Positions 4,624-20,236 of a DNA stretch of 64,000 nucleotides are shown here, in pieces (position 1 is the first letter of the stretch; each line of letters opens with the position of its first letter). The notes beneath the pieces were generated by a model. That model saw only the letters and a program-made list of their open reading frames with translations, did not search any database and was not told where the DNA came from. The DNA is from Bispira polyomma (taxonomy: Eukaryota): the NCBI GenBank assembly GCA_965649765.1, contig OZ287750.1, positions 52,514,001 through 52,578,000 of the forward strand. Reading direction: 5' to 3'. Position numbers and translations under genes: made by a program.

Positions 4624-4692
4624 ATGATCAAAGCAATATTGGTATTTAATAATCATGGTAAACCAAGACTGTCTAAATTTTATCAACACTAT
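4624..4692 (+). CDS. AP3S1: AP-3 complex sigma subunit, coding exon 1 (MIKAILVFNNHGKPRLSKFYQHY)
   Basis: Acceptor tttcag ends 4610, ATG at 4624, donor gtaagt at 4693. The peptide matches the conserved AP3S1/AP3S2 N-terminus (co-ortholog of both). Confidence 0.96.
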
Positions 4693-4944: not shown

Positions 4945-6650
4945 AAGGGTTGTTACAGTATTGCCCGGGCGGCAATACTGTAAAATACTCCAAAAGTGGA
5001 AAATACCGGGAAATAGTCTTGTGTGACTTTTTTGGCAAACCTAAATAACCAAAAGTAAGAAAATGGCTTTCAAACGATAAGTTTTAGAACATTTATTTTA
5101 CACTTATTACATTTAATTGAAATTTCTCCCACCTTTTTCAACCACATCATAAACATGATGGTTAGGTTTCATCTTTCAGAAGATCCTTCCAGAAGCAGTG
5201 TCCCTAAATGACAAAAACAGGTTTTATGACGAAAACGGCCCATTTTTAACGAAAACGGCCCATTCTTAATGAAAATGGCTTGAATGTTTTAATTTCTTAA
5301 AATTATGGGACTTATGAGCAATTTGTCAAGGCGAATTTTTTTTTTGGTAATATGCAAAGATCTTATTAGCGATACTGAAGACGTCTTTTTTGTTAATAGC
5401 TTTTATACTGGCCAGCTATATCAATTTATTAGACAATATTTAAATGGACAGTTCACGGATAATGCCGAAGACATTGGCAATGACAAGCCATGTGTATATG
5501 AGCGGTATTGAAGGATGTTTTGTCTATATCTTCATAAATACTTCACCTAAAATTTTTGTTTTGGTATCATCAGAAAGCTCTTATTATGTGCTTTGTAATA
5601 GGTATCAGGAATGTCAATTAAAAAAATCGTAATGAAGATATTGTTCGTTGAAGTTGGACTGTAATTCCAAAATTGTTCAAAACAAAGTTTTTACAGTGGA
5701 TATTATTGAATAAATGCTCATACCTAAGTGAGTATAGGTGATACAAATTTTCTAATTATATATTCGTGAAGCCAGATGAATGGGCTTTCTGGTACTTTTT
5801 ACAGAATAAAAAGATGTTCTATAATAGCTGAAAAAATTAAAGTTGAAAAGAGTCACTACTTTTGAAATTTTATTAATTTTGACCTGTTTTCGTCAAAATT
5901 GGGCCGTTTTCGTCAGAAAAGCCGTTTTCGTCATTTATGGTGACCCATCTTGAAGTATATTTTTGTGATATCACAGCAGCACCAAAAGACAAAATGAATG
6001 TACTTTCACCTATTATTGGCCCAGTATACACTTTCAAACAAGATTGAATTAATCTTTATGACAAGTATGTGCTTCCTTTCTCATTGAATGGCCCAGGCAT
6101 TGAAAAGGGATTGTATTAACAGCATAAGCAAAAGTACAAGGACCACACTATAGAACACTGAACCCGAGTTAAAAGGCTCACTCGTCAGACTTGCTAATTG
6201 CATCTTAAATCCAAAAAGGATTACACCCTCTATCTGTTTACACCAGGCCTGTTCTGTTTTATAGACTTATTAATAAAGATGTGATTTATATTTGTGTTAT
6301 TTTTCTTGAATAGAGGAAAGATTTAAAAAGGATTACACTTGTAATTAAAAGAACAATAATTCTGTTTACATTTTAGAGATGAATGGACAAAAGTAATTGA
6401 CTCAAACAATAACCCACCTACAAATTAGTAAAACATACTGAATTACCAAAAATAAAGATGGACATGACTGTTTTTCTTTCCCTATATGGTTCATATATGC
6501 GTATATCTACATAATAATAATAATATATGCATATGCAAGTATATATATGTGTAATACTATATATATTTCTATGACGACCATCATATGCTGTCCATTATTT
6601 CCAGGTATTTCCCAGTATTTCCAGCCGTCCCGGGAAATATTACAACCCTG
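4945..6650. mobile_element. non-autonomous hAT-like element
   Basis: Imperfect TIRs agggttgt..cccggg / cccggg..acaaccctg. Exact 8-bp TSD actttatc at 4937-4944 and 6651-6658. Confidence 0.75.
5198..5946. mobile_element. DNA-transposon derivative nested in the hAT element
   Basis: Short TIR (taaatgac/gtcattta) and inverted subterminal gacgaaaacggc repeats at both ends. Confidence 0.5.
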
Positions 6651-7151
6651 ACTTTATCATAAATAAGCAATCCAATTAGAGGATTATAAGTGCTAATGCA
6701 GGGTATACCCTTATAATTGGGTACAACCTATAGTTTTAAAGATAATTGCATTTATTTCTGTTTCATGAGATTCTATTGTTTGACAAACAAAAATCCCCTT
6801 CAAAGGAGTCATGTAAGATTGAACGAAGATGCTTCAGTTACAACGTCATAGGTTGAGATTTTAGGCTTTGCTTACGATGTCGTAAGATGAGATGAAAGTT
6901 ATGTGTTATGACATGCAGCTTTTGATTCAAAGTTTGCTGCTGCAGTAATTTTATTAGAGGGAATTGTTAGAGTCACAGTAAAGATGAAAAAGTTATTCAG
7001 AAACATTGATTTCCTAACCATTTTACAGAACATAGAGGTATGGAACATAAATACGACAAAAGTGTTAGTAAATTAAAAAGAACACTGAAAACATTTTTTA
7101 GTTAACAACACTGAATTTACATGATAAGCAAAAACACACAGAAATAACACA

Positions 7152-7734: not shown

Positions 7735-8430
7735 TAAGCTTTTAACTTTGTCTGTTTCTTAGCTGTAGAAGATTAAATCTCTTTACGGGTGACATGTTTA
7801 ACGGATATATATGTCCTGTATAAGCATCCAGACTTTTGACCTTCAATCTTCTCATTTAAGGTCATCGACAGAGTGCCATCTTCTCATTTAAGGTCATCGA
7901 CAGAGTGCTAAAGTACCCCAACTGACCGATTTTGGGCAAACTTCCCCAAAGTGCCTATATCTCTCTTAATATTGGTCCTAGAGGTTTGCGATCTGAAACC
8001 ACATTTAGAAAATCCTGAGCAGGGAATCTTTTGATGTGCTCAGATTTGACCTTGGCCCACTCCTTCAAGGTCAAACAGGGATGGCCAAACCTAAAAGTGC
8101 CTATATCTTGCTTATTTTTGGTCAAACGGTTTTGGATGTGAAACCAACCTGTAGGAAATCATGGGCTGGGAATCTTTTGATGTGGTCTGATTTGACCTTG
8201 GGCCCATTGTTCAAGGTCAAATGCGGATGGCCCAACTTAAAAGTGCCTATATCTCACTTATTATTGGTCCCAGAGGTTTGGGGTGCCAACCAACCTATAG
8301 AAAATCACGGGCTGGGATTCTGTAAACATGCTCAGATTTGACCTTGGGCCCCTCAAACTTAAAAGTGTCTATATCTCGCTTAGTATTGGTCCTAGAGCTT
8401 TGGAATCTAAAACCAACCTGTATGAAATCA
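7735..8430 (+). mobile_element. partial HINE-like element with internal tandem repeats (inverted copy of 41017-41918)
   Basis: ~140-bp repeats containing tttgaccttgggccc..caaggtcaaa. The left part is the reverse complement of ~41520-41690. Confidence 0.7.
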
Positions 8431-8531: not shown

Positions 8532-8623
8532 AGTGAAGATATTCAGCAGCAGATAATAAGGGAAACATTTCACTTAGTGTCAAAGAGAGATGATAATGTC
8601 TGTAATTTCTTGGAAGGTGGAAC
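8532..8623 (+). CDS. AP3S1: AP3S coding exon 2 (SEDIQQQIIRETFHLVSKRDDNVCNFLEGG-T)
   Basis: ttcag|AGT...AC|gtaagt, 92 nt, phase 0/2, conserved sigma3 sequence. Confidence 0.96.
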
Positions 8624-9375: not shown

Positions 9376-9487
9376 ATTGATAGGCGGAGCAGATTACAAA
9401 CTAATCTATAGACATTATGCCACCCTTTATTTTGTCTTTTGTGTTGACTCCTCAGAGAGTGAACTGGGAATCTTGGATCTCATTCAG
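9376..9487 (+). CDS. AP3S1: AP3S coding exon 3 (LIGGADYKLIYRHYATLYFVFCVDSSESELGILDLIQ)
   Basis: ttcag|A...CAG|gtgtgt, 112 nt, phase 2/0. Contains the adaptin-sigma signature YRHYATLYF. Confidence 0.97.
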
Positions 9488-10573
9488 GTGTGTGGTTTAA
9501 AAGCTATCATATGTTAATTAAGGCTGTGAAAGGTGTCTGGTTAGCTAAAATCGGGCCAAATATGATTCAAAATAAAAGTAAAACTACTTTAACACTGATT
9601 TCATGTTTTCTGTAGCCTAAGTTACTTTTCCAAAGCATTAATTTTGGGGCCCAGTTACAGTGTCTGATATATTTGTTTTGTTATGATTTCCAATAGTTTT
9701 CCAGATACATGTATTTCTTATTTAATTTCCAATTTTCCAGATATATCTTATTTTATCTTCGATATATTTATTTTTGTAATCTCCAAGCTGCCATATTGCT
9801 CGACTGGTTTTTAGGATTGGTTTATGCTAACTTTGCAAATATCCAGAAGTTAGTTGCCTCCATTATTTTCTGTCTCCACATTAATTAAAATTTTTTCAAA
9901 CTATAAACGTGTCTCAGTGCTTTGTGGATGGGATATTATATCATACTAGAGAATGATCAGGTCGGGATGAAAAAGTTATCTGGGTTATAAATAAAATACA
10001 TACCGTAATATATAAATTAATCAGCTGTAGATGTGGTTATATTTAAAGTACAACCACTTGCCATTTATAGCGGAGACATGACTTCTATGTTTGTTTGTTT
10101 TTTTTATAGAAGGACCATTCGTGAGTCCCAATAAAATAAATTTATACTGTTGTGTTACTTATGTACATACATGATTCAGTGATGGTGATATTGTCCCAAA
10201 ATATGCAGACTTTGACCTATGCTTAAAATTTGATCAAAAAGGTATTAATTTTTTTGGCAAGTTCTATGTTTAGAATATTTATTTTGACTTATCTATTTGG
10301 GTATTTACTATAACGTATGCTGTTTTCTATTGCAAAACAAGATTTATATTTTCTGCCATATTTAAAACACCAAGTATATTCTTTACTCTGAAGCCCTTAT
10401 TGTGAAACGTAAATGACAATCATTTTACCATACTCCTTTAATGAGTCCTTTTAAGTTTGGCACTGTTGGCAATATTAGGAATTAACTCAGGGAATAGATA
10501 GTCTACTATCGATACAGATTATCGTACAAATTGACAGTTTAATAATATTTTTTATGTTTGTGTATTGTTGTAG

Positions 10574-10645
10574 GTGTTTGTAGAGACTCTGGACAAATGT
10601 TTTGAGAATGTCTGTGAATTGGACCTTATTTTTCATGTTGATAAG
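10574..10645 (+). CDS. AP3S1: AP3S coding exon 4 (VFVETLDKCFENVCELDLIFHVDK)
   Basis: tgtag|GTG...AAG|gtaata, 72 nt, phase 0/0, conserved motif. Confidence 0.96.
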
Positions 10646-12182
10646 GTAATAAATTCAATAATCGCTCTGATAAGCAGAAGGTACTTCTGGCTCTTCCAGT
10701 ATATTTGGGTAATATCAATTGTAGAATGATTGCTGCATCTATGTAGATTTCTGAATTTATAGGTAGTGTAGAAATTTTCTTTAAGTAGTATAAATACATT
10801 TTTAATGTTGTCCTGCATATTTAATGTTAGATGAAACTCACAAAAAGTTATAGTATGTCGTCTCCTTCAGTATAAAATAATTAAAAAAGAGTAAACATAC
10901 GCAAATTTTGTAAAAATGAAATCCTGTTTTCCGAATATTCTATTTTGTAAACTCTGTTTCACTTTCCTAAATTTACATTTTTCTTTTACACTACAATCTG
11001 TCTTATATTTATAGACAGAACACATTTACTAGATTTGAAATACCAGCTTAAGATATACCATAACAATCCTCTATTTCCTGATTTTTGAATGCATTACACA
11101 AATTCTTTGTTTACATTGTGTCATTAAAAAAAAAGAGAGGTTGCTCTTCCAAGGTGTTCTAGTAAAAGCGTTTTTACGCTTCTGTTAATACACTAATACA
11201 CATGTACAAACACTCACTGCAATCCAACTGAGGTAATAAGTTAAGAGCAGAACTTGTTGTACGGACTTCCACCTCAACCAACTTGGGTTAAAATTTCAGC
11301 CCTTGCGTGTATGTCGGAAAAGTGGCAAACATTGCTTTGCACATGTATATGTGTTGTTTTCAAATCTGCAGAGGAAGCCAACACTATGCCCGTTTGCAAT
11401 TCAGTTATTGTATCTAATGCCTTATTTTATTCGAACTATGCAATTTCTTTGTGTTTCTAGTTTTTTTGTCAATGCACAATTTCCTTTTAAAGTATTGTCC
11501 TGTAATTCTTTGGCTATACAAAACACTGCCTTTGAAGGTTTTGCTGTTTTGAAAAAAAGGTGGGATTCTGTAGAGAGTGTATATAATCTTAGAATGTAAA
11601 AATAACCATTTATTCTTGGCATGGTGATCAGTTAGGGGCCCAGTTCCACTGCCGGTCATGCAAAAATGGTTACTGGGGCATTACTTCCTTTGGTATGATA
11701 TGAAGATGCCATTATCAACTGATGATATCCCTTCTCACAGAACAAGTACCTAAGAGGATGTATTTATCAATACGGCGCTGTAGAAATGCTTGTAAAATTA
11801 AATTACATAAATGAGAAGCAATATAGAAACTTTTTTAAAAATTGTGAACTTTTGAAATTACTTTAATTATACAAGTCAAAATAAAAGTTGTGACCATCTC
11901 AAATACCTTGCTGCAGAGGATATACAGTGTATATATATATATTATATACAGTATAACACCCTACATACCAAAAGGCTTTTAAGAATGCACACCTTCCTCC
12001 CTCAGATTCTACAACTGGCTTATGCAAGGGTTTTACATTTCATAGTTAATGAAATATATCTTAGATCAAGTGAGGTCTACAACTGCACTGTATATGTAGT
12101 TCTTGCTATTAATTACTGTAACCTCACTTGGACCTACCTCTGTTTCGTGTCTTCAGTGTTTACCATCACATTTCCATTTCAG

Positions 12183-12290
12183 GCCCACACTATTCTATCT
12201 GAGTTATGCATGGGTGGAATGGTGCTGGAAACGAGCATGACCGAGATTATAACCCGTTTGGAGGAGCAGAATAAACTGGAGAAGTCTGAG
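12183..12290 (+). CDS. AP3S1: AP3S exon 5a, putative mutually exclusive (AHTILSELCMGGMVLETSMTEIITRLEEQNKLEKSE)
   Basis: tttcag|GCC...GAG|gtattg, 108 nt, phase 0/0, MGGMVLET motif. Confidence 0.9.
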
Positions 12291-12357
12291 GTATTGTTTT
12301 TGTTTCACGTTGACCTTTTTCTCTTTTGGCATTGTGTTTTGTCTTCTCTTGTTGCAG

Positions 12358-12465
12358 GTCCATTTTATCCTGTCAGAGCTCTGTATGGGCGGCATGGTGC
12401 TTGAGACAAATATGAATGAAATTCTCGCTCGCACTGAGGAACAGTCTAAGTTAGAAAAACATGAG
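12358..12465 (+). CDS. AP3S1: AP3S exon 5b, putative mutually exclusive (VHFILSELCMGGMVLETNMNEILARTEEQSKLEKHE)
   Basis: ttgcag|GTC...GAG|gtatga, 108 nt, phase 0/0. Paralog of 5a; not present as an ORF in the supplied track. Confidence 0.92.
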
Positions 12466-12709
12466 GTATGACTGACTCCCCACTGCTAAAATCTAACAAG
12501 CATGGTGTGCAACCTCAGTTAGACTACTACTGTGTTGTGTATAGAGCTGTCTGTCACACTGCATGCAGGCTATTTAATATTTCTTTTCTTTTATTTTCAG
12601 ATGTTGTTTTCATTTTTCTATGGTGAACTAATTTGAAATTAACAGAGAAGAGTTAATTTTGGGAAACCTCTTTTGTCAGTAGTGTTAACAACAGAAAAAC
12701 CTGGGCTCT

Positions 12710-13035
12710 GCTGGGATTTGATCCGTGGACCTTGTAGATCTTGAGATTAATAGTCCAGTACAGTAACAGTTGAGCTAAAGGGGAAACCCTGAAGCCTGAG
12801 TGTTTAATACACTGATATACACAGATATTGCATGCCTCTCCTGCACGAAGACCTGACCTCAGGTTTTATACTACTACCACATTAACTCTACTAACTCGCA
12901 TGGCTTATGAGAGGGGGGGATCTTTGTTTGATCTGTGGACCTTGCAGATCTTGAGATTAATAATCCAGTTTTCTAACATTTGAGCTAAAGGGGAAATCTC
13001 GGAAGCCTGGGTGTTTAATGCGCTGAAATACACAG
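12710..13035 (-). repeat. two ~110-bp direct copies of a SINE-like head
   Basis: tttgatcygtggaccttgyagatcttgagattaata...ttgagctaaaggggaaa at ~12717 and ~12927. Confidence 0.5.
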
Positions 13036-14490
13036 TCGTTCTTTTCAACAAAGTCAGCCAGTGATATTGCGGTGAAAAGGGCTTTCCCTCTAAGGGTTGA
13101 ATTCATTAACAGTTTTAAAGTCTGCTTGAACTCAAATATGAAATATAGAGATTCCTTATGTACGGGAATAACCCAAAGAAGTTACCATTCACATACCATT
13201 TCAGGAAGGAACTCAAATATAGTGTGTCAGATAGAAGATATGTCTTATGTGTAAAAAGATACAGCAGGGCATATTTTGATGTTTCTCTGAGTTTCGCTTT
13301 ATGACTATGTTAAAAGCAGACCCAGGGGTATAATACTAAATGTGAAAACCTCGAGCTCAAAACTATGCCCCAATGCATCTGTGTATACTAGTAAAATGTC
13401 TTAAATCTGGCTGTATAGCAGAGTTCCTCAGGTGTATTGTATTTGAAATAAAGAATAGATATATTTTCAGAAATGTGGACAAAAATATGTCATGTATGTA
13501 CCAAGAAGTTTTTTCATCTATTCATGTTTCTGAAAGCCATTTTAGTATTCGAGGCATTACAAGTAATAAGACAAAAGACAAGAGGTTTCTCAAATAACTA
13601 TTATTTAATTTTTCCCTTTCTTTTGCATTGCAGTGTGTAGTTTTAGTTATGTTCTAAATGATACACTGATGGATTTTGTGTTTGCATGACATGCTTGTAG
13701 GAAAAACAAATTTAAACACATTAACTTCAGGTTTCATAGTCGTAGAAAGATGTGGAACAACCAAGTGTGAATTTGAACACATTTGCTTTGCTTATACATT
13801 TTCCCCTGTTTACTGATTGAAACAGCAGATATTGGACATCTGACTTTAACAGAGTCGACTGTATATATAAGCTCAGAGAAGTGAACCCTAAGATGTGGTT
13901 TAAATCTTTCCTTGAATTGTTCATTTATATATGTATAATTGCACAACTTTCCAGTCTATTCAAAGCACTCATACATTTTATTTTATATATCATAATAGTT
14001 AACACATTCACAGCACTTATCTTTCGCTGAAAAGGTTAACTTTATTAAGCAATGTTTCTTTCTCAAGGATACTATGTTTTTTAGCATTTTCATGTAAAAA
14101 TCCTATCTGAATTGCAATGTTTACAACATTTACACCGGAAATTGAAATGGGCTGGAATAGGGAACATTGACTATACAAACTTAAATCTTAGATCACCATT
14201 GAAAGCACTGGGGTTAGTGTTTATGTTTTGTGCTTTGATGCCATAGATCTGATCCCAGCAATCAATATTTAGTGTTTACTTAGTTATCTTGATATATATT
14301 ACCTTTACGGTTTTTTTCTAGTATTTTGGCTGTTACTATGCTGTTATGGGTTTTATCTGATGCTCTTAGGTTTATAGATGGTTTTGCATTAAAAGTTAGT
14401 ATTGTTTGACTTGACTTTTGTGTTGAAATAACTGGTGTTTTTGGTTTCACTTTATGCCAGCTTAAATGCATGGTTTGCATTGTGTGGTAG

Positions 14491-14529
14491 GGTCTTAATG
14501 CATTCACCGAGAAATACACCCATGAGTTG
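14491..14529 (+). CDS. candidate 39-nt cassette exon in AP3S intron 5 (GLNAFTEKYTHEL)
   Basis: ggtag|GGT...TTG|gtgact, in frame with no stop, TGCATG on both sides. Polypyrimidine tract is weak. Confidence 0.35.
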
Positions 14530-14999
14530 GTGACTGTGCATGGATTTTAGTGATTGTAAATAGTTTTACCATAATGGGCTTTATTTGTTACAAAGTGATT
14601 GTCACATTCTTATACCTGACAACTCTGGTTTAAAAAATATCACATTTAAAGTGCTATGTTGTAAAACTATAACTACTCAAATTAGAACAAGTGCCTAAGA
14701 GGATGCATTTTTCCATTTAGCGCAATATAAAGTCAAACCCCTTGAAGTAAAACTCTGATGAGTGGAATTACTTGTAGAAGTAGAAGTTATTTTGAGGTCC
14801 CATTGCTATATTTCTAATTAAAATTCACTAAGTTTAGTAGAATACATTTTTATGGTCCCTTGAGAATCGACGTAACAGGGTTCCACTTTAAATGCTTCAA
14901 ATAAATAAATAACAAAGTTCTGAAGTAGCCACATTGACCAGTGGACAATTGTCATACCAAATATGCTAATCCTACTCCTGGTGTTTTTTTACCTTACAG

Positions 15000-15011
15000 G
15001 TAATGGGAGCT
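15000..15011 (+). CDS. candidate 12-nt AP3S microexon (VMGA)
   Basis: gctaat branch-like motif, tttttttaccttacag|GTAATGGGAGCT|gtaagt. Frame-preserving, phase 0. Confidence 0.6.
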
Positions 15012-15267
15012 GTAAGTATTATTTTTGAGTGTATTTGTACATTTTTCTTACAGTTTATTATTCACTGAACTGCTTTCTTTGAAACCCTAAATAGCGCTTT
15101 CAAAGTGACACCCAAAAATTTATGCAGAGCTTTTTATCAAAAGATTATAAAGTGGGTTCAGCTCTGGCATTTTTTACCTTTTTTGGGGAAAGTTGTATTT
15201 AAAATTTGGCATGTGTACATGACTTATGTAGCAAGGATTATGTAGCCATTTTAGTATTTATCACATA

Positions 15268-15453
15268 CAGTAGAATCTCTATTATTCAACTATATCAGGA
15301 GAGTGAGAATTTGCTAGAATAATAGAAGGTCCGTAAAATGGAAAGGGCATTTTAGTATAAAACAATAGTAAAAATTAAGTTTGGGAGAATGAAATTGAGT
15401 CCGTAAAATTGAATAGTCGGATAATAGAGGGTCAGATAATAGAGGTTCTACTG
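15268..15453. mobile_element. Tc1/pogo-type MITE (CAGTAGAACCTCT family)
   Basis: TA-flanked TIR cagtagaatctct / agaggttctactg. Confidence 0.8.
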
Positions 15454-16895
15454 TATTTGTGATCTCTCTGACCATTTTGTAAGACCCTGTATTGGGGCTG
15501 AGCTCCTCCCACTTTCATTCAGTAACTAAGATAGTACTACATTGTGTCTAGTTGCTGTGCACATGCACAAAGTAAGTGGCTGATCTCGACAACAAAATAT
15601 TTTATTTAACATTCCACGGAAAGGGATGAAGACTTGTTTATTTTAATAATACACAATTACACATCTATATACACTAACCATTCATTACTCCATTTAAATA
15701 ATACATGTATTTAAATACACACTGACCTTACAGACAAAAACATCTTTAGATTTTCTTAATGCATCAAAATATTGAATATTTTGAAGGCTTTTTTTGTCAA
15801 GAGCAGCCGCTTCCTTGGCGCATGCACACTACGAATATTTATACTAGCTCTACCGTGTGAGATCTGCGAAAAACTTTTTTTTTTCTTGAAATTCAAAACT
15901 ATTGCAGATGTTTTTGAAGTTCACTTAATAATATGCAGTAAAATATTTGAGCAAATGAACTTTGGTGTTATTAGGATTACGGTACACAAAAATAGCATCT
16001 GTAAAAGACTAAAATTCTGTATAAAATCCTCCTCTTCCATGAGTGAAAGTGGAAGAAACTTCGGCCACTACCTTAAAATAGCGACTGGTTTACTGGAGAT
16101 CTGCTTTCGTAAAAATTGATTTTTGGGTGTTGTAGCATCTTGAGATATGTGACTGAATGCTTGTTTACTTTTTTTACTTTATTTTCTACTTTACTTCAGG
16201 TAATATACTTTTGTTTCAGGTTTTGTTTTCCAAGACCCTCAAGTACCTTGCAACGTTCCATTTATATTTATAGTTTATCCCTTTCTATCTGGTACAAAAC
16301 AGGACTTCATATTTTGTATTCGGTTAAAATTCGATATAATCTGTCCAAAACTGAAAAAATTGTGCTATACATATATGATATATTGTTTTATGGTTCTATG
16401 TTTTGTATGAGCTGTTTTAATAGAAAACAAAATCGGTCGTTTAGACCAAATCCTGTGTCGCAAAAACGGTCTCGTTTTTACTGATGTGTGTACCATCAGT
16501 AAAATTCAAGCATCAGCGATGGGACAGAAACTTGGTCTATACTTTGTTCAAATTTCAGCATGTAATTGCACATATGTAAGTTTGGGCATGATTGTTTTGT
16601 TCAAATCTCCGATTATGTGGCCACCTGTTATTTGGGACTTGGGGGAGCATTTTCACTCTAGTTATACATATCTTTTACTGCCAGCATAATGCATTCATTT
16701 CCATATTATGAGATCATAGGCTATTTCATACTGGAAGTTTGGTGCCATTCACATGAACTCCACACATTAATTATCACATTTTTCACTGTGCATCTCAGAA
16801 TTTTGTAGGGCCCGCATGTAGGCAATGCTCCGCCCATTTTATGTATCAATTGCCATGGTTAGGTCACTTGTTCTTTTTATATCTATCTATACATG

Positions 16896-16898
<3 letters not shown>

Positions 16899-16935
<37 letters not shown>

Positions 16936-16954
16936 TAAAAAATATATATATATA
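16899..16954. repeat. (TA)n microsatellite
   Basis: Direct reading. Confidence 0.9.
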
Positions 16955-17370
16955 TCCTTATACATAATCATGGAAGAAGAGGTCTCGTGGAGGCAGGTAC
17001 TAAACCTAGGAAAAAAACTCCGATTTGGATTCGACCATCCCAGAATATCTCAGTATTTTATAGCACTTCCTCACTGCTGTAGATATTTAACCCAAAATTA
17101 AAATTTTAATTATCAAACTGTTTCAATTTCAATAAATTGTATAGAACATATTGTCTGTTGAAGTTAAACTATAGATCCAAATTTGTAAAAAAAAAAAGTA
17201 GATTCACATCGGAGATATGTAACCGATTTACTGGTCACTGCATGCTTGTTTGTGATTGCCAGTCTCATGTTACCAAGTTAACAAACATTAGGCTACCATA
17301 CCATTTCTATTAAAAGATTTCTTTTAATTTTGTTCAATGCAACATCATTAATGCAACATCTTTATTTCAG

Positions 17371-17387
17371 CAACCCGGGTTCAACCT
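17371..17387 (+). CDS. candidate 17-nt frame-shifting AP3S microexon
   Basis: atgcaacatctttatttcag|CAACCCGGGTTCAACCT|gtaagt. Strong sites, but length is not a multiple of 3. Confidence 0.35.
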
Positions 17388-17771
17388 GTAAGTTTTAGTA
17401 AGAAATACATTGATATGTATGTCAGCCACCCAAATACTGAAACTAAAATAAACCCACGGTAGAACTTATTCCTCTGCAAAACTAAAAGAAAATTCCTGGA
17501 TCCACAACTTCAAACATCAGTAAACTTGTAAAATAATGGAAGCAGATATCAGTAACTGCCCTCTACTGATTACCAAAACAAAGATATTAGGTTTTAGAGG
17601 CCAGGACGTCACTTGGTATCACCACAAAGGTTAAAAGAAGGGGTTGGGAGCTGTTCCAATGTTTCTTGAAGATTGTATATTTTATCTTTCTAATTATAAT
17701 GTTGTTTTTTGATGATAAACTGTACGGTAATTAAATTCATAAATGATGCTTTTATTAGATGTTCTGGGGGC

Positions 17772-17990
17772 AATGCCGCAGTGTAGTGGTACCACACTTG
17801 CCTCCTACACATCTGCCATCATAGGTCGGAATCTCCAAGCTGGAATGCATGTGGAAAAGTTAGCAGAAAGCTGCCTGAAGGCTGGTGGTTTGCAGAGCAG
17901 AAAATTTTACCCAACTGCTGACTAATAATTTCCTCCACCAATGAATTGCCTAAACAAGCATCTTGAAAGTGATGTTTAAAGATCATATAA
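17772..17990 (+). mobile_element. tRNA-derived SINE
   Basis: A-box-like gtgtagtggta, core catgtggaaaagtt...gaaggctggtggttt...tttcctccacca. Confidence 0.55.
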
Positions 17991-18312
17991 ACTACAAACT
18001 CTGAAGACTCTATTTGACTTTCTGTCATTTTGAAAAAAACCCAAACATTTGTAGACCCAATGCATTTAGTATGAAGTTGCAAAGTACATTCAAATCCGAT
18101 TAAAGGATTTATTTACTGAAACTTATAGTAAATACATTGCCAATGATTGGTACATGACACATCCACACTAAGCCCCATAATGTTATGTAGAACTCTTGTC
18201 AATTCCCCTTTTCTATGAACAAAAAGTTATAGCCTCACACAGACCATTTCATTTAGAAATCTACCCTGCTAAGTTGAAATTCTGCTTAGGTAGAGGCAGC
18301 AAAAGGTATTTG

Positions 18313-18572
18313 GAGCCGTATTCATGAACAAGTAAAATTTCATTCCTAGCTTGGATTTCAAGTACTTTCTTGACTTTTTACTAACTTAGTTACTTCGATC
18401 CAAGTGGTATTCCCAAAAGAAAACTTACTTACTTCGATCCAAGTGGTATTCCCAAAAGAAAACTTACTTACTTTGGAGAGAAAACTTACTTAGATTTCAA
18501 GTGAGCGAATGAGGTACCTTGACATTTCTTCCCTAACTTAGTTAATTTTTCACTTGTTCGTGAATACGGACC
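18313..18572. mobile_element. PIF/Harbinger-like MITE (same family as 28997), nested in a CAGT-type MITE
   Basis: TIR gagccgtattcatgaacaagt / acttgttcgtgaatacggacc, flanks TTG/CTG. Confidence 0.75.
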
Positions 18573-18656
18573 CTGGTCCTTTGAGGGTCGACTTTTGAAG
18601 GGGTTCAACTATATATCAATTACTACACACACAGTTGTGTGCTTCTCTGTTTTTAG

Positions 18657-18785
18657 GCTGGTATCATTGCTGCTCCTGCAAGAGCTGTGTCAGCAGTGAA
18701 AGAAATGAACATTCCCCAGAGGATCAAAGACATGAAACTCCCAGACCTGCCTTCTATAGGAAATATCTCCTCAAAGTTTTCTTAG
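18657..18785 (+). CDS. AP3S1: AP3S last coding exon (AGIIAAPARAVSAVKEMNIPQRIKDMKLPDLPSIGNISSKFS*)
   Basis: ttttag|GCT...TAG. The APARAVSAVK.MN motif is typical of the sigma3 C-terminal extension. Confidence 0.94.
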   Translation, partial: AGIIAAPARAVSAVKEMNIPQRIKDMKLPDLPSIGNISSKFS

Positions 18786-20236
18786 TACCTTAGTCTTAGT
18801 AGTTTACTGTTAAAAATCTACAATTTTTTTACCACTATAGATTTGTGCATTTGTGTTTTAGGACAATCTGTTTTTGATTTTCAAAATGCTCGAGTTTCCG
18901 TAAAATAGGAGAAAATTTAAAGTATTACCATTGGATATGCAATAATTTTGATGTATGTTTAGCAGAGGAGACCTTTAAAAACAATTCCTATTTTCTATAA
19001 TATCTTAGTATTAGTTTAAGAAGACTCATTTAGGAAACTGTGCATAGGGAGTTTCTAAATGTTATTTCAGTCAGTGTACATGAAGCGTACTAAACCCATC
19101 TTTGTGTTCTTGATTTTGGTAGACTAAATTATAGCAATTTGTGTTTAGTTGTATTTAGGGGCTGGTTTTACAAACAATACTTGCACCATTCCTAACATAC
19201 ATTTGAAGTTTTTCTTTAATTTTTAGTAAAATAAACTGAAGTGTGATTCACAGAAATTCCCAACTCTAAATAAATGGGCTGTCAACTTAAAAGTGTTTGT
19301 TTTTGTAACTTAAAATTAAAGGTGAACTTATTGTATCAAAGTATTGTTTGTAAATTCTGCTCCGAGAGCTGTAAATATAGATGGAAGTGGTGACAGTATC
19401 AATGTGCAATACAGCTCACACTTCATGGTTTGACCGCCATTTTCACATTGGTGTGATAAACTTGATTTCATAACGATTATCCAGATTCTATACAAAGGGA
19501 ATTGCTGGTATGAAGTTCAGATGTAGTGTCCTTGTCAGACCTCATTTTGTGTCCATGTAATAACCGTAACCATGTGATATAACTTTTCATATATGTGTAC
19601 ATGGTCTGGTCTCATTTTTGCCTGAGAATTAGAATGTTTACTGTAAATTATTGTCCTATATATCTAAGGTTGTGTAAGGCCAAAGAATTGACATGGTAAA
19701 AAAAAAAAGAGAAAAAGAGTTCAACAATGATGTTGTAATCTCTAATCCCCAAATAAAGACTTGAGAATGTCCTTGGATAAGAATTATACACAAGCAAATA
19801 GAATTTTCCAAAAAGGACATTGTTGTCATGGTCATGTCCCCCAAGATCAAATTAAAGCCTAACCCGGTCACTATATCTACATGCCTTCCAAATATTTCTG
19901 TTAAACATACAGTTCCTGTGATCCTAGTTGTTTACCCCGAGGTATAGTATAAGATTTTTAATGACAAGGTCAAATAGAGGTCAGATCATGACATTGAACA
20001 ACTGTACCTCTAAATGAATATTTTAAACAAATATGAACTTCCCGAGCAGTTCCCAAGACCTAGTCAGACAAGGGGGGATGTTCATACCCCAGTATGTAAA
20101 ATGTCGTACAATGTTCTGTATATATTTTAACTGTACAGTTTGTTGAGAGTTAAAGATTATTGTTTATGCAGCATCCATAGTTTTATTCTAGAAAAAGCCT
20201 TAAAATAGGAAGTGATGTTTTTGTGGTCTAGGTTCG

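What the first reader, a model, noticed from the sequence alone, without database searches (positions are those of the whole stretch)
12183..12465. AP-3 sigma exon 5 is tandemly duplicated, with a 67-nt intron built for steric mutual exclusion
Seen: two 108-nt phase-0 exons with 27/36 identical residues; 18 of the 27 conserved residues use different codons. The intervening intron (12291-12357) is 67 nt. Its best branch-like motif (gttgAc, A at 12313) lies only ~23 nt from the 5a donor and is followed by a ~44-nt pyrimidine-rich tract. Established: a branch point too close to the upstream donor blocks joining of the two exons (alpha-tropomyosin/alpha-actinin steric mechanism). Such a mechanism is needed here because double inclusion would stay in frame. 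Inference: this lineage makes two sigma3 isoforms by splicing where vertebrates use two genes (AP3S1/AP3S2).
Basis: partly seen in the sequence, partly recalled or inferred. Interest (0 to 1): 0.78.

Follow-up and report, generated by a model that had tools for sequence, protein, structure and literature searches.

The report
Either-or exon pair in worm AP-3 sigma
A marine worm's only gene for the small subunit of the AP-3 cargo-sorting complex carries two old, intact versions of one exon, 67 bases apart, so it probably makes two protein versions by choosing one exon per mRNA; this is a familiar kind of splicing in a gene where I found no report of it, and no RNA from this animal could be checked.

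Summary
Two 108-nt phase-0 exons (12183-12290, 12358-12465) encode 36 residues each. 27/36 residues are identical, 18 of those 27 use different codons, and a 67-nt GT..AG intron separates the exons.

This is the only AP-3 sigma locus in the genome.

A related species (locus L018) has the same pair with a 69-nt intron. Between the two species both copies evolve under purifying selection (5a omega about 0.11, 5b about 0.055). The other introns of the gene differ by hundreds of bases.

The pair is absent from Capitella, Helobdella, Ridgeia and one further worm.

A second worm lineage (L012) duplicated the same exon separately. There, transcripts of equal length carry one copy or the other.

The steric reading is plausible but untested:
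- Every A in the intron lies 41 nt or less from the 5a donor.
- The consensus-like branch sites lie at 17 and 23 nt.
- None of about 52 sampled introns of this genome is under 137 nt.
- Capitella splices a 47-nt intron in this same gene.

I rate it a new member of a known kind.

The parts
4624..4692 (+). AP-3 sigma exon 1 (start codon, 23 codons)
   Evidence: The translation begins MIKAILVFNNHGK and is followed by a gtaagt donor. It matches residues 1-25 of Ridgeia AP-3 sigma.
8532..8623 (+). Exon 2 (92 nt, ends in phase 2)
   Evidence: Reading frame and splice sites are. The protein is 100% identical to L018 with 8 synonymous changes.
9376..9487 (+). Exon 3 (112 nt)
   Evidence: Nucleotides are 85% identical to L018.
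10574..10645 (+). Exon 4 (72 nt), the common upstream exon whose donor at 10645/10646 must choose 5a or 5b
   Evidence: The 24 residues are identical in Ridgeia, Capitella, Helobdella, L018 and L019.
12157..12182 (+). Conserved intronic flank and pyrimidine tract before the 5a acceptor
   Evidence: It aligns with L018, although the introns are otherwise unalignable.
12183..12290 (+). Exon 5a, the upstream and more divergent copy (starts AHT...). Its donor GAG|gtattg lacks G at +5.
   Evidence: The L018 orthologue shares 32/36 residues, with dN 0.061, dS 0.57 and omega 0.11. Changes are 5 non-synonymous to 9 synonymous, binomial P = 5e-4 against neutrality.
12291..12357 (+). 67-nt intervening intron. 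It has 5 A, 38 T, and no AG before the acceptor. yUnAy matches are at A12307 and A12313. The only other internal A, at 12331, is 41 nt from the donor.
   Evidence: L018 has 69 nt with the same make-up. No unusual fold was found, z = -0.28.
12358..12465 (+). Exon 5b, the downstream canonical-type copy (starts VHF...). Its donor is GAG|gtatga.
   Evidence: The L018 orthologue shares 35/36 residues, with omega 0.055. Its dS of 0.21 is unusually low against 0.9-1.7 in exons 2 and 4. It aligns to human AP3S1 residues 116-151, E = 3e-9.
12497..12522 (+). Conserved intronic block 32-57 nt after the 5b donor. It holds GCAUG (12500-12504) and ACCUCAGUU, which is complementary to the 5b donor region.
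   Evidence: 24 of 26 bases are identical to L018 inside otherwise unalignable intron. The consensus fold pairs it with the last bases of 5b plus the GU of the donor: 9 pairs, no covariation.
12466..18656 (+). 6.2-kb intron between 5b and exon 6, enriched in sense-strand GCAUG
   Evidence: 14 GCATG against 2.8 expected from the rest of the window (Poisson P = 1.5e-6). The reverse complement is not enriched, and the other introns of the gene hold 0-0.65 per kb. L018 shows no such enrichment.
18657..18785 (+). Exon 6 (42 codons plus stop), the common downstream exon
   Evidence: It is 90% identical to exon 6 of L012.

Best explanation
This is the single AP-3 sigma (sigma3 adaptin) gene of an annelid-like marine worm. 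Exon 5 encodes the last 36 residues of the ordered sigma3 core. It was duplicated in tandem long ago, and both copies have been kept as coding exons.

The most likely working is mutually exclusive splicing. The exon 4 donor joins either 5a or 5b, the chosen exon joins exon 6, and two 193-residue isoforms result. They differ at 9 of 36 positions, 7 of which are diagnostic in both species.

Joining 5a to 5b is probably prevented because the intron between them is held at 67-69 nt. Every possible branch adenosine then lies 41 nt or less from the 5a donor, and the consensus-like ones lie at 17 and 23 nt. That is the short-intron / distant-branch-point steric arrangement known from alpha-tropomyosin, OGDH and several C. 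elegans genes.

The choice between the copies is probably regulated. Pointers are the weak 5a donor, the very high nucleotide conservation of 5b, and a conserved intronic block after 5b that contains GCAUG and can pair with the 5b donor.

Shown: the anatomy, the single locus, conservation and purifying selection in two species, the conserved intron length, and either-or use of an independently duplicated copy of the same exon in another lineage.

Inferred: exclusivity in this animal, the steric cause, and the regulators.
For: - Anatomy and splice sites.
- One AP3S locus in the 1.04-Gb genome.
- The copies are old (pS about 1, pN 0.17).
- The related species L018 has the same 5a / 69-nt intron / 5b layout.
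- Omega is 0.11 for 5a (5 non-synonymous to 9 synonymous changes, P = 5e-4) and 0.055 for 5b.
- Intronic flanks and a 26-nt downstream block are conserved only around this pair.
- The short intron is 67 versus 69 nt, while the other introns measure about 750/440, 1086/590 and 1537/1150.
- No third copy exists.
- Of about 52 introns sampled in myosin, CCT and adaptin genes of this genome, none is shorter than 137 nt.
- In the second lineage, genomic L012 holds two tandem copies. Transcripts L015 (c2-type) and L016/L017 (c1-type) all encode 191 residues, identical outside exon 5.
- None of the roughly 170 relatives fetched, drawn from three searches, carries both copies spliced together. The only proteins with two copies are read-through ORFs called on genomic contigs.
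- Known steric threshold of about 50 nt in vertebrates, and the OGDH distant branch points at 25-41 nt: PMC7969005.
- In C. elegans the limit follows the species' own minimal intron size, and half of the clusters with 3n-length exons have introns too short to excise: PMC4165533.
Against:
- Double inclusion stays in frame. The exon lies at the very end of the ordered core, before a disordered tail, so a doubled segment is not obviously lethal to the fold.
L018 has a good tttAt 39 nt from its donor and 30 nt from its acceptor.
- Capitella splices a 47-nt intron in the same gene.
- The L012 lineage keeps either-or use with a 117-123-nt intron whose likely branch region is about 75 nt from the donor. 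Something other than steric blocking can therefore do the job.
- The intron census is small and indirect.
Confidence: 0.6

Rival explanations
1. The pair is mutually exclusive, but the 67-nt intron is not what enforces it. Exclusivity would come from splice-site competition, bound regulators (for example an Rbfox-type protein at the conserved GCAUG), or pairing of the conserved block with the 5b donor. The short intron would then be only a leftover of the tandem duplication.
For: - The independently duplicated pair in L012 has a 117-123-nt intron, yet the transcripts seen carry one copy only.
- Capitella removes a 47-nt intron in this gene.
- L018 has a consensus-like branch site 39 nt from its donor.
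- A conserved GCAUG-containing block lies after 5b and can pair with the 5b donor.
- GCAUG is enriched in the downstream intron.
Against: - The intron length is held at 67 versus 69 nt while all other introns of the gene differ by hundreds of bases.
- None of about 52 sampled introns in this genome is under 137 nt.
- The intron has only 5-6 A and no internal AG, as in known distant-branch-point introns (PMC7969005).
- The donor-masking stem shows no covariation.
- The GCAUG enrichment is not seen in L018.
Confidence: 0.25
2. Both copies are often or always included together, giving a 229-residue sigma3 with a doubled C-terminal helical segment.
For: - Double inclusion keeps the frame (108 nt).
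- The segment is the end of the ordered core and is followed by a disordered tail, so an extra copy might be tolerated.
- The 67-nt intron has canonical GT..AG ends and a strong pyrimidine tract.
Against: - No fetched AP-3 sigma relative has a spliced double exon.
- In the other lineage with a duplicated exon 5, transcripts are 191 residues with one copy.
- A constitutively doubled segment would not explain why the intron is kept so short in a genome of long introns, or why the copies keep 7 diagnostic differences in two species.
Confidence: 0.08
3. Exon 5a is an unused or nearly unused relic (pseudo-exon), and only the canonical 5b is spliced into mRNA.
For: - 5a is the more divergent copy. 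Its first residue changes a V that every other exon-5 sequence compared here keeps.
- Its donor lacks G at +5 in both species.
- It evolves faster than 5b (4 versus 1 residue changes against L018).
- No 5a-type protein was found in the protein collection.
Against: - The open frame, acceptor, donor and exact 108-nt length are kept in two species whose introns no longer align.
- Omega is 0.11 with 5 non-synonymous to 9 synonymous changes, P = 5e-4 against neutral drift.
- 5b-type proteins of this clade are equally missing from the collection, so the absence of 5a says nothing.
Confidence: 0.06
4. The duplication is an assembly artefact.
For: None beyond the general possibility of collapsed or expanded tandem repeats.
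Against: The copies differ at 38 of 108 bases. The same arrangement stands in an independent assembly of another species.
Confidence: 0.01

Closest known systems
OGDH exons 4a/4b (vertebrates): mutually exclusive exons enforced by distant branch points near the 5' splice site (PMC7969005)
   Same: - Two homologous exons with a short intervening intron whose size is held constant in evolution.
- Candidate branch adenosines within 17-41 nt of the upstream donor (25-41 nt in OGDH).
- A long U-rich tract and an AG-free zone up to the acceptor.
   Different: - The branch points here are predicted, not mapped.
- The threshold of about 50 nt was established for vertebrate spliceosomes, and the annelid limit is unknown.
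- The gene and protein are unrelated.
- The intron here is 67 nt in all, so it may simply be too short whatever branch point is used.
Alpha-tropomyosin exons 2/3 steric interference
   Same: The logic is the same: the branch point of the downstream exon lies too near the donor of the upstream exon, so the two cannot be joined.
   Different: - As I recall, the tropomyosin intron is over 200 nt with a far-upstream branch point. Here the whole intron is 67 nt.
- No experiment exists here.
C. elegans mutually exclusive clusters with introns too short to excise (egl-15 5B/5A, let-2 9/10, bet-2, gly-5, gly-6; PMC4165533)
   Same: - An invertebrate case with homologous exons of 3n length, so nonsense-mediated decay cannot police double inclusion.
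- The intervening intron is far below the species' usual minimum.
- egl-15 is also regulated through GCAUG by Fox-1/ASD-1 (my knowledge).
   Different: - The C. elegans introns are 14-30 nt against a species minimum of about 40 nt.
- Here the intron is 67 nt against a shortest sampled intron of 137 nt. The true minimum for this species is not known.
Vertebrate AP3S1 / AP3S2 paralogues
   Same: Two sigma3 versions exist in one organism. The alternative exon corresponds exactly to AP3S1 residues 116-151.
   Different: - The vertebrate paralogues are separate genes that differ along their whole length and are separately transcribed.
- Here only 36 residues are swapped and the promoter is shared.
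- Functional equivalence is untested.
Second AP-3 sigma exon-5 duplication in another worm lineage (L012 genomic; transcripts L015, L016, L017; also P0125 and P0029)
   Same: - The same exon, the same 108-nt length and phase, and a tandem arrangement.
- Either-or use is seen in transcripts.
   Different: - There the divergent copy is downstream and the intron is 117-123 nt.
- That copy forms its own clade (96/89 support), apart from the window's 5a clade (93/98).
- The window has no copy of that type, and L012 has no 5a-type copy in the 667 nt upstream of its first copy.
- The two duplications therefore look separate, although 36 columns cannot prove it.

Membership tests
AP-3 complex sigma subunit (Clat_adaptor_s, PF01217) | Sequence match to sigma3 along the whole gene, and orthology rather than another sigma adaptin | tested here: met
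   All exons match Ridgeia AP-3 sigma at 61-93% identity, while the other sigma-adaptin loci of the genome match at 40-45%. Exon 5b aligns to human AP3S1 residues 116-151, E = 3e-9, far better than to the AP-1 or AP-4 sigma subunits. Relatives carry PF01217.
Mutually exclusive exon pair born of tandem exon duplication | Adjacent homologous exons of equal length and phase with their own canonical splice sites | tested here: met
   108 nt each, phase 0, 27/36 residues identical, AG/GT at both.
Mutually exclusive exon pair born of tandem exon duplication | Both copies kept as coding sequence by selection in more than one species | tested here: met
   L018 holds both copies. Omega is 0.11 for 5a and 0.055 for 5b.
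Mutually exclusive exon pair born of tandem exon duplication | Each mature mRNA holds exactly one of the two exons | not testable with these tools
No transcript-derived protein of this clade was found. The feature is met only in the separately duplicated pair of another lineage.
Steric-interference (short intron / distant branch point) exclusivity | The distance from the upstream donor to the branch point of the downstream exon is below the minimum the species' spliceosome needs | tested here: inconclusive
   All internal A are 41 nt or less from the donor, and the yUnAy matches lie at 17 and 23 nt. None of about 52 sampled introns is under 137 nt. However, the species' limit is unknown, L018 has a good site at 39 nt, and Capitella splices a 47-nt intron in this gene.
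Steric-interference (short intron / distant branch point) exclusivity | The intervening intron is kept short in evolution, with a long pyrimidine tract and an AG-free zone | tested here: met
   67 versus 69 nt while the other introns of the gene differ by about 390-500 nt. The tract is 77% pyrimidine and there is no AG before the acceptor.
Steric-interference (short intron / distant branch point) exclusivity | Mapped lariat branch points, and double inclusion when the intron is lengthened | not testable with these tools
   This needs lariat sequencing and a minigene experiment.
Rbfox/Fox-1-regulated alternative exon | A conserved (U)GCAUG in the intron next to the regulated exon | tested here: met
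   GCAUG at 12500-12504 lies in a block with 24/26 bases identical to L018. Binding and effect are untested. The wider GCAUG enrichment is not shared by L018.

The most novel reading that the evidence does not exclude
The last 36 residues of the sigma3 core may be a recurrent target for making two AP-3 complexes from one gene. On this reading, worms duplicated this one exon at least twice independently and kept each pair as an either-or choice. In the window's lineage the choice would be hard-wired by an intron held at 67-69 nt in a genome of long introns. It would be tuned by a conserved GCAUG / donor-masking element. That would give a splice-level counterpart of the vertebrate AP3S1/AP3S2 gene pair, with tissue-specific cargo sorting.
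Probability: 0.3. Interest if true: 0.55.

Novelty: new member of a known kind. Interest (0 to 1): 0.42.

Why it matters
AP-3 sorts cargo to lysosome-related organelles and synaptic vesicles, and vertebrates have duplicated several of its subunit genes to make ubiquitous and neuronal complexes. If this single-copy worm gene makes two sigma3 versions by exon choice, it shows another route to the same diversity. It also points to residues 116-151 of sigma3 as the part where variation matters.

The pair is a compact natural test case for steric exclusivity outside vertebrates and nematodes: a 67-nt intron, 3n-length exons, and a relative with a 69-nt intron.

It is not a new principle. Tandem exon duplication with either-or splicing is well known, and so is enforcement by a short intron.

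Tried and rejected

2. Joined model. Exons were searched one by one by reference, inside natural open frames of the window.

3. 5a-type transcripts. A word search with 5a words found only 6 candidates and none of 5a type. 5b-type proteins of this clade are equally missing, so the absence carries no weight.

4. A third copy. I looked for a third exon-5 copy of the L012 'GGLALET' type in the window and in L018, and found none.

5. Orthology of 5a with the alternative copy of the other lineage. The tree separates them, though with only 36 columns.

6. Structure in the 67-nt intron. The fold is no better than shuffled sequence, z = -0.28.

7. Literature. No paper linking AP-3 sigma or AP3S1 to mutually exclusive exons of this kind was found.

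8. Intron census. I compared the spacing of exon-by-exon Pfam hits. It is usable but small and indirect. One apparent gap of about 119 nt turned out to be a 137-nt intron.

9. Other points. The species was not identified.

Full report
**What is there.**
The window carries a six-exon AP-3 sigma gene on the + strand.
- Exon 1: 4624-4692
- Exon 2: 8532-8623
- Exon 3: 9376-9487
- Exon 4: 10574-10645
- Two copies of exon 5: 12183-12290 (5a) and 12358-12465 (5b)
- Exon 6: 18657-18785

With either copy of exon 5 the product would be 193 residues.

- Both copies are 108 nt and phase 0, each with its own ...cag acceptor and GAG|gt donor.
- 27/36 residues are identical, and 18 of the 27 conserved residues use different codons.
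- The intron is 67 nt. The A at 12313 is intron position 23, and a 44-nt tract of 77% pyrimidine with no AG follows it.
- Synonymous sites between the copies are saturated (pS about 1) while pN is 0.17. The duplication is old and both copies stayed coding.

A search of the whole 1.04-Gb assembly finds one AP-3 sigma locus. The other sigma-adaptin genes match at only 40-45% identity.

**RNA.**
Earlier notes of this scan on the same genome also say no RNA was available.

Searches used single exons by reference, inside natural open frames of the window.

**Relatives.**
Three annotated annelid genomes have a single exon 5 between exons 4 and 6: Ridgeia (L001), Capitella (L010) and Helobdella (L011). 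An unnamed worm on Logan contigs (L019) also has one.

The third word search found P0158. It is a read-through ORF on a 1.19-Mb ENA contig that spans part of a 5a-type exon, a 23-codon spacer and a 5b-type exon. The locus, L018, has this layout:
- exons 2, 3 and 4
- 5a at 9974-10081
- a 69-nt intron
- 5b at 10151-10258

L018 comes from a different species. Its introns do not align with the window's except next to exons, and dS in exons 2 and 4 is 0.9-1.7.

Between the two species:
- 5a differs at 4 residues, with 5 non-synonymous and 9 synonymous changes. That gives dN 0.061, dS 0.57 and omega 0.11, with binomial P = 5e-4 against neutrality.
- 5b differs at 1 residue, with omega 0.055.

The upstream, more divergent copy is therefore a selected coding exon and not a relic.

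Seven positions separate the a-type from the b-type in both species. One of them is the first residue, a V that every other exon-5 sequence compared here keeps.

**Signs of regulated splicing.**
- Around the pair the intronic flanks are conserved: 26 nt before 5a, the acceptor end of the short intron, and a 26-nt block 32-57 nt after 5b. Constitutive exons 2-4 align only a few bases into their introns.
- 5b is 95% identical in nucleotides, with dS 0.21. That is far below the other exons and suggests extra constraint on its RNA.
- The 5a donor lacks G at +5 in both species, while the 5b donor has it.
- The conserved block holds GCAUG (12500-12504). It also holds ACCUCAGUU, which the consensus fold pairs with the last bases of 5b plus the GU of its donor: 9 pairs, both sides invariant, so there is no covariation test.
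- Sense-strand GCAUG is enriched in the 6.2-kb intron after 5b, 14 against 2.8 expected, P = 1.5e-6. It is not enriched on the other strand or in the other introns. L018 lacks this enrichment, and the test was post hoc.

**The steric claim.**
In favour:
- The short intron has only 5 A (6 in L018). The internal ones lie at positions 17, 23 and 41, and only 17 and 23 fit yUnAy.
- No AG occurs before the acceptor.
- The length is 67 versus 69 nt, while the gene's other introns measure about 750/440, 1086/590 and 1537/1150 nt in the two species.
- Among about 52 introns read off exon-by-exon Pfam hits in myosin, CCT and adaptin genes of this genome, the shortest is 137 nt and most are 400-1500 nt.
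- This is the architecture described for OGDH 4a/4b, with branch points 25-41 nt from the donor, a threshold of about 50 nt and a restricted intron size (PMC7969005).
- It also matches the C. elegans clusters whose introns fall below the species minimum, which make up half of the clusters with 3n-length exons (PMC4165533).

Against:
A tgtttcAy motif is conserved instead, and L018 has a good tttAt 39 nt from its donor and 30 nt from its acceptor.
- Capitella splices a 47-nt intron between exons 4 and 5 of this same gene.
- The annelid threshold is unknown, and my census is small.

**A second duplication of the same exon.**
P0007 and six near-identical ORFs from ENA, JGI and Logan contigs read through two tandem exon-5 copies.
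- In L012 the copies are c1 at 668-775 and c2 at 899-1006, separated by a 123-nt intron (117 nt in some contigs). Exon 6 lies 2.4 kb downstream and is 90% identical to the window's.
- Three transcript contigs from three related species encode 191-residue proteins. P0063 and P0039 are identical outside exon 5, and P0040 differs from them at two residues near the N-terminus.
- L015 uses a c2-type exon, 87% nucleotide identity to L012 c2 and 63% to c1.
- L016 and L017 use the c1-type exon, 83-84% identity to c1.
- Further transcripts with the same 'GGLALET'-type exon exist (P0125, P0029) beside canonical-type relatives (P0012, P0126).

This is direct transcript evidence that a duplicated sigma3 exon 5 is used in place of its twin, not together with it.

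A tree of the 36-residue segment puts the c2-type exons in one clade (96/89), the two 5a in another (93/98) and the two 5b in a third (98/97).
- The window has no c2-type copy.
- L012 has no 5a-type copy in the 667 nt held upstream of c1.
- The divergent copy is upstream here and downstream there.

Separate duplications are the simpler reading, though 36 columns cannot settle it.

**What the exon encodes.**
It aligns to human AP3S1 residues 116-151. One solved construct ends exactly at residue 151 (9c5c_S). The exon is therefore the last stretch of the ordered sigma3 core, and the rest is a tail that I take to be disordered. This weakens the structural argument against double inclusion, and I have lowered that argument's weight accordingly.

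**Verdict.**
- That both exons are functional alternatives is well supported, about 0.8.
- Strict either-or use is likely, about 0.65, by analogy and by the conserved anatomy.

It is a new example, in a gene where I found no report, of a well-known kind of splicing.

Noticed in passing
L012:668-1006 (ENA ERZ27247855 contig); transcripts L015, L016, L017: A second worm lineage duplicated AP-3 sigma exon 5 separately, with the divergent 'GGLALET'-type copy downstream and a 117-123-nt intron. Transcripts of related species carry one copy or the other and give 191-residue proteins that are identical or nearly so outside exon 5.
   Followed up: yes
window 12497-12522: A 26-nt intronic block after exon 5b has 24/26 bases identical to L018. 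It contains GCAUG and a run complementary to the 5b donor (9 predicted pairs, no covariation possible).
   Followed up: partly
window 12466-18656: Sense-strand GCATG is enriched in the intron after 5b, 14 against 2.8 expected (P = 1.5e-6). It is not enriched on the other strand, in the gene's other introns, or in L018.
   Followed up: partly
G000:C8:56480808-56481576 (L025), minus strand: The AP-1/AP-2 beta-adaptin gene has two tandem homologous exons for Adaptin_N positions 40-85, about 500 nt apart. Both are open and end with ...cgg|gta donors. This is a possible further either-or exon pair in an adaptor subunit.
   Followed up: partly
L010:9140-9186 (Capitella teleta): The intron between exons 4 and 5 of Capitella AP-3 sigma is only 47 nt, and exons 3 and 4 are fused there. 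Very short introns are therefore spliceable in at least one annelid.
   Followed up: yes
L012:886-898; proteins P0007 versus P0152/P0156: Metagenome contigs of the same organism differ by one GTGCAG unit right at the c2 acceptor, giving a 123- or 117-nt intron. This is an indel polymorphism that offers two in-frame acceptors.
   Followed up: no
proteins P0035 and P0138 (Dimorphilus gyrociliatus DgyrCDS2644 and DgyrCDS2643): Two consecutively numbered AP-3 sigma gene models on the same 2.5-Mb contig have identical exon-5 peptides. They are either a tandem gene duplicate or a split model.
   Followed up: no
window 7750-8430; L018:1425-2240, 6180-6980, 18820-19630: A repeat family of about 150-nt units sits in intron 1 of the window's gene. 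It also occurs in several places in the relative's locus at 70-78% identity.
   Followed up: no
L011:7905-7967 (Helobdella): A weak exon-5-like match (38% identity, E = 0.24) lies between exons 4 and 5. It is probably noise but could be a decayed duplicate.
   Followed up: no
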